A DNA stretch of 63,372 nt, the filler included, from Octopus bimaculoides (lineage: Eukaryota), in NCBI RefSeq assembly GCF_001194135.2. It is 10 parts of 9 records of this genome, joined end to end, with 100 filler letters (N's around TTAATTAATTAA, not from the genome) between each part and the next. Parts side by side here need not be neighbours in the genome. Positions count along the whole stretch, not along the records: positions 55,233 to 60,916 come from NC_068997.1; 9 more parts are not named here. The stretch is one strand, 5' to 3'. Below the pieces are notes generated by a model. That model saw nothing but the letters and a program-made list of their open reading frames with translations. It was not told the origin of the DNA and ran no database searches. The number at the start of each line of letters is the position of its first letter. Within the stretch, counting starts at the first letter, position 1. Below are positions 55,846 through 59,240 of the stretch, piece after piece. The position numbers and the translations under genes are program-made.

Positions 55846-56668
55846 GATACATATATTTTAGGAAGTTAAAAGTTATGACCAGTCATAGAGTGACCATTGG
55901 CTTCGCACCTATAAAGCGCTTAGCAGAATTGACGACTCGTTCGATTCAGTCTTTAACTTTCTATAAAATATATTACTGCTTTAGAGCATGCTTCTTTCTC
56001 GGNNNNNNNNNNNNNNNNNNNNNNNNNNNNNNNNNNNNNNNNNNNNNNNNNNNNNNNNNNNNNNNNNNNNNNNNNNNNNNNNNNNNNNNNNNNNNNNNNN
56101 NNNNNNNNNNNNNNNNNNNNNNNNNNNNNNNNNNNNNNNNNNNNNNNNNNNNNNNNNNNNNNNNNNNNNNNNNNNNNNNNNNNNNNNNNNNNNNNNNNNN
56201 NNNNNNNNNNNNNNNNNNNNNNNNNATATATGTATATTATGTGTATATATATATATATATAAATTTCCAATTTTTATGCATGAAAAATGAGGGCTTTCTG
56301 TCAAAACAATGACCAGGTAATGCTCATACTGGCGAATATATTCTGTAAACGAGACAGTAAATGTATGCAAGGCTTTCTTAAAATTCAACATGTATATCTC
56401 GGCCGTTGCTGTTCCTATAAGTTCTGACTGGGGCTCGTTTATCTGTTTGGAACATATTCGATTTTTATTGGAAAAATTCAAATAATTATAAAGGTAAGAT
56501 AGCATACTTACGTACGTACAAACAAACAAACAAACAAACAAACAAGCAAGCAAACAAACATACATACATACATACATACATACATACATACATACATTCA
56601 TACATACACACATACATACACACATACATACATAAACACATACATGCATAAATAAATGTTTAAAATGT

Positions 56669-57616
56669 TTAAGATTCCTTTTCTCGAGGAGTTAACTCGA
56701 TATCATCTTTTGTATCTTCTTGTTTCGCATTTCCTTTCGTCATTTTTTTCCATATACTCTGCCGTATTGAGGAATCACAGAGCCAGAAAAACGGTAACAA
56801 TACACTGGCTATCATGTATATAAAGTCAACAAGGTTGTACAAATTCATCAGTTGTGAGTGAATATACACAAACATAACAATAGATGCTGATATGGAAATC
56901 ACGTCAAGAACTGTCAGGAACAAAGCTATGATTGTTTGGGCTGCCAGAGTGTTGAAAGTCAGCATTAAGGGTTCTTCTCGTTTAGCCGCTATATATAGCT
57001 GGAGAATGACACAGATGATCAGTAAACAGTCAAAGAATAGAGCAAACCCGAGCTGGTACCATATAAGGGAGACATGAATGTAAAGAAGGCAGAAATTTAA
57101 ATCTTTTTCTGACGTTCCTGAGTAGATGGAAATTGTTTGGGTGAAGAGGATACCCCAAAGAACAGCAAGAAAAATTGCCTGAAAGGTGAGAAATTTTTGC
57201 TTCTCATGTAGTTTCGGCTTAAAATATTGCACTATAACATCAATACAGATCGGAAGTATGAAACAGCGTGTTCCATCTTTAAACACGGTATACATGGTAT
57301 GGATGAAAACGCAGCTACTATGCGACATCTTTTCATGGATGTGAATATGAACATTGTAAAAATAATAGAACAATCCAAAGAAGGTGTAGTTAAGTAAATA
57401 ATTCAGCAGTGGTAATGAATAGCATTTCCTGTAAGTTTTTTTGTCTTGGTTTACGACACACAAGAGAAATCCGTTATAAAGGAACATAATAGTTGCACAA
57501 ACACAAGCAACCGCGTCCTTCCAAAAATATGATATTTCCTGTAATTCGACTTCAGTAAAATTCATACTAATGTTACTAAAGTTTCCATAATCAAAAACAA
57601 ATGACAGGTTTTCCAT
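56669..57616 (-). CDS. Intronless divergent rhodopsin-like (class A) 7TM receptor, 315 aa; candidate chemosensory/orphan GPCR
   Basis: Intact 948-nt ORF from ATG 57616. Four N-terminal N-glycosylation sequons (NLS, NFS, NIS, NFT) and seven hydrophobic segments. TM1 Asn (LYNG); TM3 Cys exactly 24 residues before Asp (C3.25/D3.49 spacing, but DVI instead of DRY); TM4 Trp; ECL2 Cys (NFCLL); TM7 Pro (SVLLPFFW) then a helix-8-like DSSIR. Downstream AATAAA at 56464-56469. Confidence 0.8.
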   Translation of the reverse strand: MENLSFVFDYGNFSNISMNFTEVELQEISYFWKDAVACVCATIMFLYNGFLLCVVNQDKKTYRKCYSLPLLNYLLNYTFFGLFYYFYNVHIHIHEKMSHSSCVFIHTMYTVFKDGTRCFILPICIDVIVQYFKPKLHEKQKFLTFQAIFLAVLWGILFTQTISIYSGTSEKDLNFCLLYIHVSLIWYQLGFALFFDCLLIICVILQLYIAAKREEPLMLTFNTLAAQTIIALFLTVLDVISISASIVMFVYIHSQLMNLYNLVDFIYMIASVLLPFFWLCDSSIRQSIWKKMTKGNAKQEDTKDDIELTPREKES

Positions 57617-58159
57617 TTTGTTAATTCTTTTACTAAATAAAACAAACAATTACAAAAAACGTGCTTACCGAAGGACAGTTTTCAGGCCTGTAAGAAAAAT
57701 AAATATTTGTCAAATAAGATTTCTTAAAACCATTGAAATATCATCTAGATAATAACAAGACAATCAACAAAATGTGCAGTAGCTCTTTCCATATGTTACC
57801 ACTCGATTAATAGACACTTTGAGGTCAACATGAACATCAATACGATTGTTTTGAACCTGCAAAATGGACATCTTCTTTAGCGTCTTCAGTTTCTTGAAAT
57901 ATATTCTGTTTTATGTGATTAATCACTCATTACACATACCGGTTTGGAGTTAAATATTCTTAAATATGTAAACTGCAATTGTAAGATTTCTTCTGGCTCC
58001 AGGTTAAACATCTTTTTGGAGGTATGTTAAGTTAGTATTAACATATTTAAATACAGGATGCTTCAGAAGAACTAAAATACGCTGTTAGAACATAAAAACG
58101 TTATTAACTAATGATTCAAACTTGAAATGTAAAAGGTACTTAACTACAAATTGCAGGAT

Positions 58160-58545: not shown

Positions 58546-58609
58546 AATATATATTCTATATTGATATACTATATAGATATACTATATATATATATATGTA
58601 TATATCATA

Positions 58610-58915
58610 TGTTCTTCCCTCTGGCGACTCCTTACTGTCATCCAACAACCCTAGGGACCTTGGAGTAATTGTTCATAACAATCTAAGCTGGAGTTCCCAC
58701 GTAAACAGCAAGGTTCCCTTGGCCTGCAGGATGTGCTCCTGGATTCTGAGAACTTTCCGCTCTATAGATACCCACACCATTATCCTTCTCTACTCTAGTT
58801 TTGCCCGACCCCAGCTTGAGTACTGTTGCCCACTGTGGTCCCCCCCCCCATACGAAGCAACTCATTATGAAAGTGGAAGCACTCAAGAGGTCAATAACAA
58901 GAAAGATAGACGGCA
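58610..58915 (+). mobile_element. CR1/L2-type LINE RT C-terminal fragment
   Basis: RDLGVIVHNNLSWSSHV..ILRTF..LLYSSFARPQLEYCCPLWSP. Confidence 0.85.
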
Positions 58916-59014
58916 TACTATATATATATATGTATGTGTGTGTGTATTATATATATATTATATATATACATATATATTACATATGTATTATATACTCTCT
59001 TATTTACATGTTTC

Positions 59015-59240
59015 AGTAATTTGACTGCGGCCATGCTGGAGCACCGCTTTTAGTCGAGCAAATCGACCCCAGGACTTATTCTTTGTAAGGCTAATACTTA
59101 TTCTATCGGTCTCTTTTGCCGAATCGCTGGTTTACGGGGACGTAGACACACCACCATCGGTTGTCAAGCGATGTTGGGGGGACAAACACAGACACACAAA
59201 CATATACACACACATATACATATACATATATACGACGGGT
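59015..59240 (-). mobile_element. SINE family C 3' module
   Basis: Reverse complement of the family C 3' module, followed by (CA)/(TA) and ATACGACGGG. Confidence 0.85.

What the first reader, a model, noticed from the sequence alone, without database searches (positions are those of the whole stretch)
56669..57616. Intact orphan 7TM receptor lacking DRY/NPxxY in a transposon desert
Seen: the only clean host-like ORF in 63 kb, with class A spacing landmarks but DVI instead of DRY and SVLLP instead of NPxxY. Established: rapidly evolving intronless rhodopsin-like receptors form lineage-specific chemosensory expansions in molluscs. Inference: a member of a possibly undescribed cephalopod receptor family.
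Basis: partly seen in the sequence, partly recalled or inferred. Interest (0 to 1): 0.7.

Follow-up and report, generated by a model that had tools for sequence, protein, structure and literature searches.

The report
Octopod-specific divergent rhodopsin-like receptor gene
This is a real, conserved octopus gene for a seven-helix, rhodopsin-like membrane receptor that lacks nearly all the usual signalling motifs; it is one copy of a small tandem gene family so far found only in octopods, and nobody has studied what it does.

Summary
Window 56669-57616 (minus strand) is an intact 315-codon ORF, far longer than chance allows in this AT-rich DNA. It has seven hydrophobic segments and an N-glycosylation-rich N-terminus.

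It is a working gene. dN/dS is 0.13-0.20 against an 89%-identical Octopus-like orthologue and 0.15-0.17 against a 60%-identical Argonauta hians orthologue.

It is not solitary. Octopus bimaculoides chromosome CM046617.1 carries at least four intact same-strand paralogues within about 65 kb. A. hians has a matching array.

No Pfam or PDB sequence match exists. Two lines still place the family with class A GPCRs:
- AlphaFold models of two members (pTM 0.72-0.73) hit class A GPCRs in nearly all of the top 50 Foldseek matches.
- A profile-profile alignment to rhodopsin, beta2-adrenergic and A2A receptors runs end to end in register (E 4e-5; controls 0.1-0.8).

Conserved across the family: C3.25, the ECL2 Cys and W4.50 in all 11 members; an acidic 3.49 in all (Asp in 10, Glu in 1); P7.50 in 10 of 11. 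Missing in all 11: R3.50, D2.50, CWxP, N7.49 and Y7.53.

UniProt already auto-labels three paralogues as "GPCR family 1 profile" proteins, but I found no paper on them. A chemosensory role is plausible and untested. RefSeq lists two paralogues 49 kb apart as isoforms of one gene, which hints at a shared 5' leader exon.

The parts
56669..57616 (-). Complete single-exon coding sequence: 315 aa plus a TAA stop. It encodes a divergent class A-like 7TM receptor.
   Evidence: ORF. (far longer than chance). (dN/dS 0.13-0.20). (7TM plus helix 8 model; class A GPCR structural matches). (in-register hhalign to class A).
57557..57616 (-). Codons 1-20 of the extracellular N-terminal tail, which runs to about residue 33. 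They carry four N-x-S/T sequons, at N3, N12, N15 and N19.
   Evidence: Every one of the 11 family members has at least one sequon in its first 26 residues. This fits an N-out topology.
57233..57241 (-). D126-V127-I128, the counterpart of the E/DRY motif at the cytoplasmic end of TM3. The acidic 3.49 is kept; Arg3.50 and Tyr3.51 are lost.
   Evidence: aligned to ERY/DRY. (the family has D/E followed by V/L/F/I/Y then I; no member has Arg).
57311..57313 (-). Cys102, the counterpart of C3.25 and half of the conserved TM3-ECL2 disulfide pair.
   Evidence: Invariant in the family. Aligned to rhodopsin C110.
57089..57091 (-). Cys176 in extracellular loop 2, the presumed partner of Cys102.
   Evidence: Invariant. 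Aligned to rhodopsin C187. The disulfide bond itself was not tested.
57155..57157 (-). Trp154, the counterpart of W4.50 in TM4.
   Evidence: Invariant in 11 of 11 members. Aligned to rhodopsin W161.
56783..56797 (-). L274-P275-F276-F277-W278, the counterpart of NPxxY in TM7. Only Pro7.50 is kept, and Trp replaces Tyr7.53.
   Evidence: aligned to NPVIY. (P in 10 of 11 members, W in 10 of 11, N in none).
56738..56773 (-). Helix 8 (residues 282-293, SSIRQSIWKKMT), including I284-R285, the counterpart of the helix-8 F-R.
   Evidence: helix H282-293. (IRQS aligned to FRNC). The IRQSI consensus appears.
56690..56701 (-). Conserved motif (H/I)-E-L-T, residues 306-309, seven residues before the C-terminus of this protein and 3-9 residues before the end in its relatives.
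   Evidence: E307 and L308 are invariant in the 8-sequence alignment A1. The full HELT/IELT motif is kept in 9 of 11 members, including the most divergent (P0007, 22% identity). Its function is unknown.
57688..57704 (-). Candidate 3' splice acceptor (atttatttttcttaCAG) 71 nt upstream of the ATG. It implies one or more non-coding 5' exons further upstream.
   Evidence: It is conserved in the Octopus-like orthologue L001, and similar Y-tract+CAG sites lie 24-72 nt upstream of the ATG in most family members. Not verified with RNA data.
56503..56654 (.). (CATA)n microsatellite starting 15 nt after the stop codon, in the presumed 3' UTR or flank.
   Evidence: The orthologous contig L001 also ends in the same repeat.

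Best explanation
The ORF is a functional single-coding-exon gene of Octopus bimaculoides (chromosome CM046617.1). It encodes a highly divergent rhodopsin-like (class A-type) seven-transmembrane receptor.

Shown:
- Topology is N-terminus out (glycosylation sequons) and C-terminus in.
- The protein has 7 TM helices plus an amphipathic helix 8.
- The structural landmarks of class A are conserved: C3.25 and the ECL2 Cys, an acidic 3.49, the ICL2 Pro, W4.50, P7.50 and the helix-8 Arg.
- The gene is one of at least four intact same-strand tandem paralogues in about 65 kb. A syntenic array exists in Argonauta hians. The family could be traced only to octopod sources.
- Orthologues are under purifying selection.

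Inferred mechanism: it acts as a cell-surface ligand sensor whose binding pocket faces outward between the TM helices and ECL2. The whole family lacks the canonical activation switches (D2.50 sodium site, R3.50, CWxP, N7.49 and Y7.53, with W at 7.53 instead). Signal transfer therefore cannot follow the textbook class A route. It would have to use a family-specific route, as in other motif-poor chemoreceptor GPCRs such as nematode serpentine receptors and vertebrate T2R/V1R. The conserved ICL1 (D58, K64), helix 8 and C-terminal HELT motif may take part.

The tandem, lineage-restricted architecture with single-exon coding sequences makes a chemosensory or other lineage-specific ligand-sensing role the most likely function (my estimate about 0.4). 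It is not demonstrated.
For: Real gene:
- The open frame is 326 codons against at most 155 in shuffles.
- Coding sequence is 90% nt identical to L001, with a single one-codon indel and no frameshift. The 5' flank is 77% identical with 35 gap columns.
- dN/dS is 0.13-0.20 against L001 and 0.15-0.17 against the A. hians orthologue.

Family and locus:
- Paralogues are 22-46% identical, all about 300 aa.
- Four intact copies lie at CM046617.1 231-296 kb, all on the same strand.
- In A. hians one orthologue plus two paralogues lie next to an ABI gene. Species identities come from PMC13652810.

Fold:
- AF2 pLDDT 74.6 and pTM 0.73, with 7 long helices plus helix 8. Foldseek against the PDB gave 411 hits at E<=1e-3. 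Nearly all of the top 50 are class A GPCRs, apart from three class B calcitonin/amylin receptor chains; TM-scores are 0.47-0.75 over about 270-320 columns.
- The same holds for paralogue P0006: pTM 0.72, and all top 50 are class A.

Sequence-level homology:
- hhalign of the family against rhodopsin/beta2AR/A2A gives Prob 69%, E 4.3e-5 and 282 columns end to end, with the landmarks in register.
- Reversed, shuffled and bacteriorhodopsin controls give E 0.13-0.84 over 7-47 columns.
- The reference sequences were verified against the PDB.

Topology:
- N-terminal sequons occur in every member.
- K+R residues cluster in the loops predicted to be cytoplasmic (read from the sequence using the helix limits).

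Independent label: UniRef names three paralogues 'G-protein coupled receptors family 1 profile domain-containing protein'.
Against: - No Pfam family matches any member at E<=10. No PDB sequence matches the single protein or the family profile.
- The hhalign probability is only 54-69%.
- The AF2 models rest on an 8-sequence alignment, and any 7-helix bundle tends to find GPCRs in the PDB.
- Every microswitch that defines class A signalling is missing, so G-protein coupling is doubtful.
- There are no expression data, no ligand, and no tissue information.
- Orthologue omega of about 0.15 is lower than is usual for fast-evolving chemoreceptors (my general knowledge).
Confidence: 0.72

Rival explanations
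1. A signalling-silent 'atypical' 7TM protein. It keeps the GPCR fold but, having lost R3.50, D2.50, CWxP and NPxxY, does not activate G proteins. It would instead work as a scavenger or decoy, a scaffold, or an accessory or chaperone subunit for other receptors, perhaps through the conserved C-terminal HELT motif.
For: All canonical activation switches are lost in all 11 members. Cytoplasmic elements are strongly conserved: ICL1 D58/K64, helix 8 IRQSI and the C-terminal (H/I)ELT. Purifying selection on orthologues shows that a function is maintained. Loss of DRY is a hallmark of atypical chemokine receptors (my knowledge; DRY variation in viral 7TM receptors is reviewed in PMC3414077, listed but not read).
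Against: Several well-established signalling chemoreceptor GPCR families also lack these motifs, including T2R, V1R and nematode SR (my knowledge). Tandem diversification into paralogues only 22-46% identical fits ligand diversification better than a single scaffold role.
Confidence: 0.2
2. A non-GPCR seven-helix membrane protein, such as a 7TM ion channel of the insect GR/OR type, a PAQR-type protein or a transporter-like protein, that only superficially resembles GPCRs.
For: No Pfam 7tm family matches. Sequence identity to any GPCR structure is 10-18%. Gustatory-receptor-like proteins exist in molluscs (my knowledge).
Against: In both Foldseek runs the top 50 matches are GPCRs, with full-length alignments; all are class A except three class B chains in the first run. 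A helix 8 is present. The in-register alignment matches the class A-specific landmarks C3.25/ECL2-Cys, W4.50, P7.50, the ICL2 Pro and N-Y at 2.40-2.41, and the bacteriorhodopsin control fails. N-terminal glycosylation sequons and the K/R distribution indicate N-out topology, opposite to insect GR/OR. At about 300 aa it is shorter than GR/OR proteins.
Confidence: 0.03
3. A chance ORF, a recently dead pseudogene, or a receptor gene carried by a transposon or virus rather than a host gene.
For: The surrounding DNA is microsatellite-rich and holds a transposon-like fragment. The ORF has no Pfam match.
Against: The ORF length is far beyond chance. dN/dS is 0.13-0.2 in two independent comparisons. 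The array is conserved between Octopus and Argonauta next to a host ABI gene. No transposase or terminal repeats are associated with the copies, and no family member came from a source identified as viral or non-cephalopod (the source of one, ENA P0007, is unknown).
Confidence: 0.02

Closest known systems
Class A (rhodopsin-like) GPCRs (Pfam PF00001 7tm_1; PROSITE 'G-protein coupled receptors family 1' profile)
   Same: Predicted 7TM plus helix 8 fold, with TM-scores of 0.47-0.78 to solved class A receptors. N-out topology. In-register counterparts exist for N1.50 (6 of 11 members), N-Y 2.40-2.41, C3.25 with the ECL2 Cys, an acidic 3.49, the ICL2 Pro, W4.50, P7.50 and the helix-8 Arg. UniRef gives three paralogues the family 1 profile name.
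   Different: No PF00001 hit at E<=10. R3.50, Y3.51, D2.50, C/W/P of CWxP, N7.49 and Y7.53 are absent in all 11 members. There is no affinity to any particular class A subfamily: the two models' top hits range from cannabinoid, lysolipid, chemokine and adenosine receptors to peptide and aminergic receptors, all with similar E-values.
Cephalopod- and octopus-specific GPCR expansions described by Ritschard et al. 2019 (PMC6408891): class A groups 1-2 and class B groups 3-4
   Same: Lineage-restricted, tandemly clustered GPCR genes in O. bimaculoides.
   Different: Those groups were collected by Pfam signature and sit next to neuropeptide-receptor, adhesion or Methuselah clades. The present family matches none of those Pfam models at E<=10 and would not have entered that census (an inference from their method). 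It is also much smaller: four copies seen so far, against 21-63.
Motif-poor chemoreceptor GPCR families: Aplysia-type molluscan chemosensory receptors, nematode serpentine receptors, vertebrate T2R and V1R
   Same: About 300 aa, short N- and C-termini, single-exon coding sequence, tandem arrays, lineage restriction, strong paralogue divergence, and loss of DRY/NPxxY-type motifs. The comparison rests on my knowledge of those families; the features of this family come.
   Different: No detectable sequence relationship. No Pfam 7TM_GPCR_Sr*, TAS2R or V1R hit appears at E<=10, and phmmer finds no relative outside the ~7 family clusters. Expression in chemosensory tissue is unknown. Orthologue dN/dS (about 0.15) is rather low.
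Octopus chemotactile receptors (CRs; nicotinic-acetylcholine-receptor-like pentameric channels of the suckers)
   Same: Octopod lineage-specific receptor genes in tandem arrays that are proposed or shown to sense chemicals (my knowledge).
   Different: A completely different fold: a Cys-loop pentameric channel with a large extracellular domain and 4 TM helices, against a 7TM GPCR-like monomer here.

Membership tests
Class A (rhodopsin-like) GPCR | Seven transmembrane helices with an extracellular N-terminus, an intracellular C-terminus and helix 8 | tested here: met
   There are seven hydropathy peaks. AF2 gives 7 long helices plus H282-293, and likewise for paralogue P0006. N-terminal N-x-S/T sequons occur in all 11 members. 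K/R residues are enriched in the predicted cytoplasmic loops (read from the sequence).
Class A (rhodopsin-like) GPCR | Match to Pfam PF00001 (7tm_1) at or above the gathering score | tested here: not met
   No Pfam family at E<=10 for the window protein. No 7TM receptor family matches any of the 8 members scanned.
Class A (rhodopsin-like) GPCR | Profile-level sequence homology to bona fide class A receptors, in register over all helices | tested here: met
   hhalign of A1 against rhodopsin/beta2AR/A2A gives Prob 69%, E 4.3e-5 and 282 columns. A re-run gave 54% and 1.3e-4, while reversed, shuffled and bacteriorhodopsin controls gave E 0.13-0.84. The strength is moderate, not overwhelming.
Class A (rhodopsin-like) GPCR | Three-dimensional similarity to solved class A structures | tested here: met
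   Foldseek against the PDB gave 411 hits (window protein) and 228 hits (P0006) at E<=1e-3. Nearly all of the top 50 in each run are class A receptors, with TM-scores of about 0.5-0.78. The models are predictions from a shallow alignment.
Class A (rhodopsin-like) GPCR | Conserved Cys3.25 and ECL2 Cys pair | tested here: met
   C102 and C176 are invariant in 11 of 11 members and align to rhodopsin C110 and C187. Bond formation cannot be tested here.
Class A (rhodopsin-like) GPCR | E/DRY motif with Arg3.50 | tested here: not met
   The window protein has D-V-I. The family has D/E, then V/L/F/I/Y, then I. No member has Arg.
Class A (rhodopsin-like) GPCR | NPxxY in TM7, CWxP in TM6 and Asp2.50 | tested here: not met
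   At 7.49-7.53 the protein has LPFFW: P is kept in 10 of 11 members, with no N and no Y. At 6.47-6.50 it has LDVI, with no W or P. Position 2.50 is L, V or I.
Class A (rhodopsin-like) GPCR | Trp4.50 and Asn1.50 | tested here: met
   W154 is invariant in 11 of 11 members. N48 is present in the window protein but in only 6 of 11 members.
Class A (rhodopsin-like) GPCR | PROSITE family 1 profile match | not tested
   PROSITE cannot be run here. UniRef names for three paralogues (A0A0L8HPW6, A0A0L8HPW3, A0A0L8HR87) imply such a match for them. The tool hides the name of the window protein itself.
Class A (rhodopsin-like) GPCR | Ligand-dependent coupling to heterotrimeric G proteins or arrestin | not testable with these tools
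   This needs heterologous expression and signalling assays.
Molluscan chemosensory GPCR expansions (Aplysia type) | Tandem arrays of lineage-specific receptor genes with single-exon coding sequences | tested here: met
   Four same-strand copies lie in about 65 kb of CM046617.1. Three copies lie in 14 kb of A. hians. All coding sequences are uninterrupted.
Molluscan chemosensory GPCR expansions (Aplysia type) | Detectable sequence homology to gastropod chemosensory receptor families | tested here: not met
   Exhaustive phmmer over 1.84 billion representatives returns only 7 proteins. Those whose source could be identified are octopod (O. bimaculoides, A. hians); the Logan contigs look Octopus-like and one source (ENA, P0007) is unknown.
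Molluscan chemosensory GPCR expansions (Aplysia type) | Expression in chemosensory epithelia | not testable with these tools
   No RNA-seq or in situ data are accessible here.
7TM ion channels (insect GR/OR-like, GRL) | N-in topology, about 350-450 aa, GR/OR fold | tested here: not met
   N-terminal glycosylation sequons point to N-out topology. The protein is 315 aa. No GR/OR structure appears among the top 50 Foldseek hits of either model, and there is no Pfam 7tm_6/7tm_7 hit.
Nematode serpentine receptors / vertebrate T2R and V1R | Match to the corresponding Pfam models | tested here: not met
   No such family matches at E<=10 for any of the 8 members. The resemblance is only in general architecture.

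The most novel reading that the evidence does not exclude
The octopus cluster may be a single multi-receptor transcription unit. One promoter and one or more non-coding 5' leader exons would be spliced alternatively to one of several complete receptor-coding exons spread over tens of kilobases, so that splice choice decides which receptor of this octopod-specific, motif-less class A-like family a cell makes.

Three observations point this way:
- RefSeq lists two paralogous full-length proteins encoded about 49 kb apart as isoforms X2/X3 and X4 of one gene, LOC106869328, and a third as 'isoform X2' of LOC128246974 (positions).
- Nearly every family member, in three or four species, has a polypyrimidine-CAG acceptor 24-72 nt upstream of its ATG.
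- All copies share one orientation.
Probability: 0.2. Interest if true: 0.7.

Novelty: new variant of a known kind. Interest (0 to 1): 0.42.

Why it matters
Octopus chemosensation is currently explained mainly by channel-type chemotactile receptors. GPCR censuses of cephalopods have relied on Pfam signatures, and this family escapes them. That makes it a ready set of candidate receptors that expression and ligand screens have not yet considered.

The family also keeps the class A scaffold while every member has lost R3.50, D2.50, CWxP and NPxxY, with a conserved Trp at 7.53. It is therefore a natural test case for how a rhodopsin-type receptor can work, or what else it can do, without the textbook activation switches.

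If the cluster really uses a shared leader exon spliced to alternative whole coding exons, it would be an unusual way to choose among receptors.

Tried and rejected
- Pfam scans of the protein and of 8 family members at E<=10 gave nothing relevant, only weak chance hits such as TgpA_N and T4SS_pilin.
- PDB sequence searches with the single protein and with the family profile gave only chance hits: a designed TM pentamer and tetraspanin-15.
- The word-indexed homologue search found only the protein itself, P0002 and P0007, even with the family alignment as query. The exhaustive representative search was needed to find the family.
- The bacterial promoter/terminator scan is irrelevant for a eukaryotic locus and is disregarded.
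- A search for the sequencing-run prefix SRR118693 returned one unrelated paper, so the species of the Logan contigs remains unknown.
- Searches for the LOC and UniProt identifiers returned no paper. Two topical literature searches found no description of this family.
- Pfam scans of three other ORFs in the piece were negative.
- Rejected readings: chance ORF, pseudogene, insect-type 7TM channel, and microbial-rhodopsin-type protein.
- I could not survey CM046617.1 248-276 kb, so the copy number of four is a minimum. I could not test decapodiform or Nautilus genomes.
Full report
**1. The observation**

Window 56669-57616 on the minus strand is an intact ORF of 315 codons plus TAA. It starts at an ATG in a good context. 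The stop-to-stop frame is 326 codons. The next longest in this 5.7-kb piece is 165, and the longest in 200 shuffles of the same base composition is 155. With a stop-codon probability of 0.071 per codon, the expected number of such open frames is about 3e-7. The piece is about 65% A+T, rich in microsatellites, and contains several runs of N.

**2. It is a conserved, selected gene of Octopus bimaculoides**

An exact look-up places the protein on CM046617.1 of GCA_001194135.2. PMC13652810 identifies that assembly as O. bimaculoides.

An 89%-identical, 314-aa orthologue lies on a 1.3-kb genomic-looking contig from a public sequencing run, Logan SRR11869391. The coding region is 90% nt identical, with a single one-codon indel and no frameshift. 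The 5' flank is 77% identical with 35 gap columns.

- dN/dS against this orthologue is 0.13 (NG86) to 0.20 (ML).
- Against a 60%-identical orthologue in Argonauta hians (GCA_054771915.1, L004 2791-3819) it is 0.15-0.17.

This is purifying selection on the protein.

**3. It is one of a tandem family**

- An exhaustive phmmer search of 1.84 billion cluster representatives returned only seven proteins. Six are 296-314 aa; the seventh, P0008, is a 111-aa fragment of a gene with an in-frame stop.
- The window protein and the five full-length relatives whose encoding contigs I retrieved carry no precomputed Pfam hit. Direct scans of 8 members found no relevant Pfam family either.
- In O. bimaculoides the window gene sits at record 295,032-295,976. 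It is followed on the same strand by paralogues at 286,065-286,964 (34% identity, BLASTP E 9e-51), 237,498-238,400 and 231,212-232,123.
- The stretch 248-276 kb could not be fetched, so four is a minimum.
- In A. hians the orthologue is followed by two near-identical paralogues and then an ABI (Abl-interactor) gene. Further A. hians copies lie on another contig.
- Paralogues are 22-46% identical to each other.
- One divergent member, P0007 (22-27% identity), comes from an ENA assembly of unknown organism.

**4. What kind of protein it is**

Sequence-to-profile methods are blind to it. There is no Pfam family at E<=10 for any of 8 members. There is no meaningful PDB sequence hit for the protein or the family profile.

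Three independent lines nevertheless point to the class A GPCR fold.

(a) *Topology.* There are seven hydrophobic segments and four N-x-S/T sequons in the first 19 residues, with at least one such sequon in all 11 members. Lys and Arg are concentrated in the loops predicted to be cytoplasmic, taking helix limits.

(b) *Structure prediction.* AlphaFold2 on an 8-sequence alignment gives pLDDT 74.6 and pTM 0.73, with seven long helices and a short helix 8. Foldseek against the PDB gives 411 matches at E<=1e-3. Nearly all of the top 50 are class A receptors (CB1, GPR3, apelin, LPA1, CCR1/2, A2A and others), apart from three class B calcitonin/amylin receptor chains; alignments span about 270-320 columns with TM-scores of 0.47-0.75. 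The paralogue P0006 behaves the same way: pTM 0.72, with top hits to ghrelin, BRS3, GPR119, beta1-adrenergic and other receptors. No particular subfamily is favoured.

(c) *Profile-profile comparison.* The comparison was with an alignment of bovine rhodopsin, human beta2-adrenergic and human A2A receptors. hhalign gave Prob 69%, E 4.3e-5 and 282 aligned columns from TM1 to helix 8. Reversed profiles, ten column shuffles and bacteriorhodopsin gave E 0.13-0.84 with only 7-47 columns.

In addition, UniRef names three O. bimaculoides paralogues 'G-protein coupled receptors family 1 profile domain-containing protein'.

**5. Motif anatomy**

Retained:

| Window residue | Class A position | Conservation in the family |
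|---|---|---|
| N48 | N1.50 | 6 of 11 |
| N72-Y73 | N2.40-Y2.41 | 9 of 11 |
| C102 | C3.25 | invariant |
| D126 | acidic 3.49 | D in 10, E in 1 |
| P134 | ICL2 Pro | 10 of 11 |
| W154 | W4.50 | invariant |
| C176 | ECL2 Cys | invariant |
| P275 | P7.50 | 10 of 11 |
| I284-R285 | helix-8 F-R | IRQSI consensus; E307 and L308 further downstream are invariant |

Lost in every member:

- R3.50 and Y3.51.
- D2.50, which is L, V or I.
- CWxP, which is LDVI in the window protein.
- N7.49 and Y7.53. The motif is LPFFW, with Trp at 7.53 in 10 of 11 members.

Family-specific conserved elements have no counterpart known to me:

- LLNYxLNYTLF in TM2;
- a His-containing ECL1, (N)VHIHI, with H90 invariant;
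- FILPICxDxIVKYF(K/R)P at the TM3-ICL2 boundary;
- D58 and K64 in ICL1;
- a near-C-terminal (H/I)ELT motif kept even in the most divergent member.

**6. How it most likely works**

Shown: a conserved, selected, N-out 7TM protein with a class A-like scaffold that belongs to a lineage-restricted tandem family.

Inferred: it is a surface receptor that binds a ligand in the extracellular-facing helical pocket. Because all canonical microswitches are absent, it must either couple through a family-specific route or not activate G proteins at all. The first case has precedents in T2R, V1R and nematode serpentine receptors, which also lack these motifs (my knowledge). The second case is the 'atypical receptor' rival.

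The tandem, lineage-specific, strongly diverged architecture with single-exon coding sequences is what chemoreceptor families look like. I rate a chemosensory or other ligand-sensing function as the single most likely role, at roughly 0.4. No expression or ligand evidence exists here.

**7. Comparison with what is known, and novelty**

The published survey of cephalopod GPCR expansions collected receptors by Pfam PF00001, PF00002, PF00003 and PF01534. It found class A groups next to neuropeptide receptors and class B adhesion or Methuselah-like groups. The present family matches none of those Pfam models at E<=10, so it would not have been included (inference).

No paper in the held library mentions the RefSeq or UniProt identifiers of the paralogues. 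Two topical searches found no description. The gene models themselves do exist in RefSeq and UniProt as 'uncharacterized' proteins.

I therefore class this as a new variant of a known kind: an uncharacterised, octopod-restricted, motif-less branch of rhodopsin-like receptors. It is not categorically new.

**8. A lead seen in passing**

RefSeq names the proteins of two different paralogous coding exons, about 49 kb apart, as isoforms X2/X3 and X4 of one gene, LOC106869328. A third is named isoform X2 of LOC128246974.

Most family members have a polypyrimidine-CAG acceptor 24-72 nt upstream of the ATG. In the window this is atttatttttcttaCAG at 57688-57704, and it is conserved in L001. This fits coding exons that receive one or more shared upstream non-coding exons. 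It could equally be an artefact of automated gene modelling on read-through transcripts. It needs junction-level RNA-seq.

**9. Limits**

- The AlphaFold models rest on a shallow alignment.
- The hhalign probability is moderate.
- Only octopod sources could be tied to the family; squid, cuttlefish and Nautilus genomes could not be searched directly.
- The species of the Logan and ENA contigs are unknown.
- No expression data were available.

Noticed in passing
L002 19013-19915 and L009 3724-4629 (O. bimaculoides CM046617.1, about 286 kb and 238 kb): RefSeq calls these two different paralogous full-length proteins isoforms X4 and X2/X3 of one gene, LOC106869328, although their coding exons lie about 49 kb apart. 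P0006 is 'LOC128246974 isoform X2'. This suggests shared 5' exons spliced to alternative complete coding exons, or a gene-model artefact.
   Followed up: partly
window 57617-57704 (-): Upstream of the ATG lies an acceptor-like site (…ttcttaCAG|GCCTGAAAACTGTCCTTCG). It is followed after 19 nt by a donor-like GTAAGC and, 36 nt later, by a second acceptor-like ttgttttatttAG only 16 nt before the ATG. All of these are conserved in the orthologous contig L001 but not in A. hians. This may be a micro-exon and mini-intron in the 5' UTR, or a coincidence.
   Followed up: partly
window 56690-56701 (-) and the equivalent C-termini of all relatives: A near-C-terminal (H/I)ELT motif, 3-9 residues before the end, is conserved in 9 of 11 members, including the 22%-identical P0007. 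It sits in an otherwise variable tail. It may be a trafficking or partner-binding signal; its function is unknown.
   Followed up: no
window 57332-57352 (-), residues 89-95: Extracellular loop 1 is His-rich (VHIHIHE) and H90 is invariant across the family. This might be a metal- or pH-sensitive site. That is pure speculation.
   Followed up: no
L004 10001-10918 and 15836-16753 (Argonauta hians): Two tandem paralogues are 98.8% nt identical yet differ at 10 amino acids. dN/dS is 2.4-2.9, based on very few substitutions (dS about 0.005). This could be a recent duplication under diversifying selection, or noise.
   Followed up: partly
L004 2791-3819 (A. hians orthologue of the window gene): The orthologue is 342 aa because its tail, after the IELTP motif, is extended by a poly-Lys stretch and a run of about 20 Glu residues.
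   Followed up: no
L010, L011, L012 (Logan contigs; P0008, 111 aa): This family member has an in-frame stop after codon 111, with homology continuing in the same frame for about 180 more codons. It is probably a pseudogene in the unidentified Octopus-like species.
   Followed up: partly
window 58596-59024 (+): A 142-aa ORF contains '…DLGVIVHNNLSWSSHV…LYSSFARPQLEYCCPLWSP'. From memory this resembles the region just after the reverse-transcriptase domain of non-LTR (LINE) retrotransposon ORF2 proteins. There is no Pfam hit, and it is flanked by TA/GT microsatellites.
   Followed up: partly
L002 20408-20929 (-), outside the window piece: A 173-aa ORF has a sequence typical of a mariner/Tc1-type transposase fragment (my reading; not scanned). 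It lies just downstream of the second paralogue.
   Followed up: no
window 56503-56654 and L001 1283-1319: A (CATA)n/(TATG)n microsatellite begins right after the stop codon in O. bimaculoides, and the same repeat follows the stop in the orthologous contig. The repeat is therefore positionally conserved between the two species.
   Followed up: no
L003 (ENA ERZ21867824, contig ctg66120l): The most divergent family member, P0007, sits on a 16.9-kb contig of an ENA assembly whose organism I could not identify. It is the only ORF over 100 aa in the 12.8 kb I fetched. If the host is not an octopod, the family is older than shown.
   Followed up: partly
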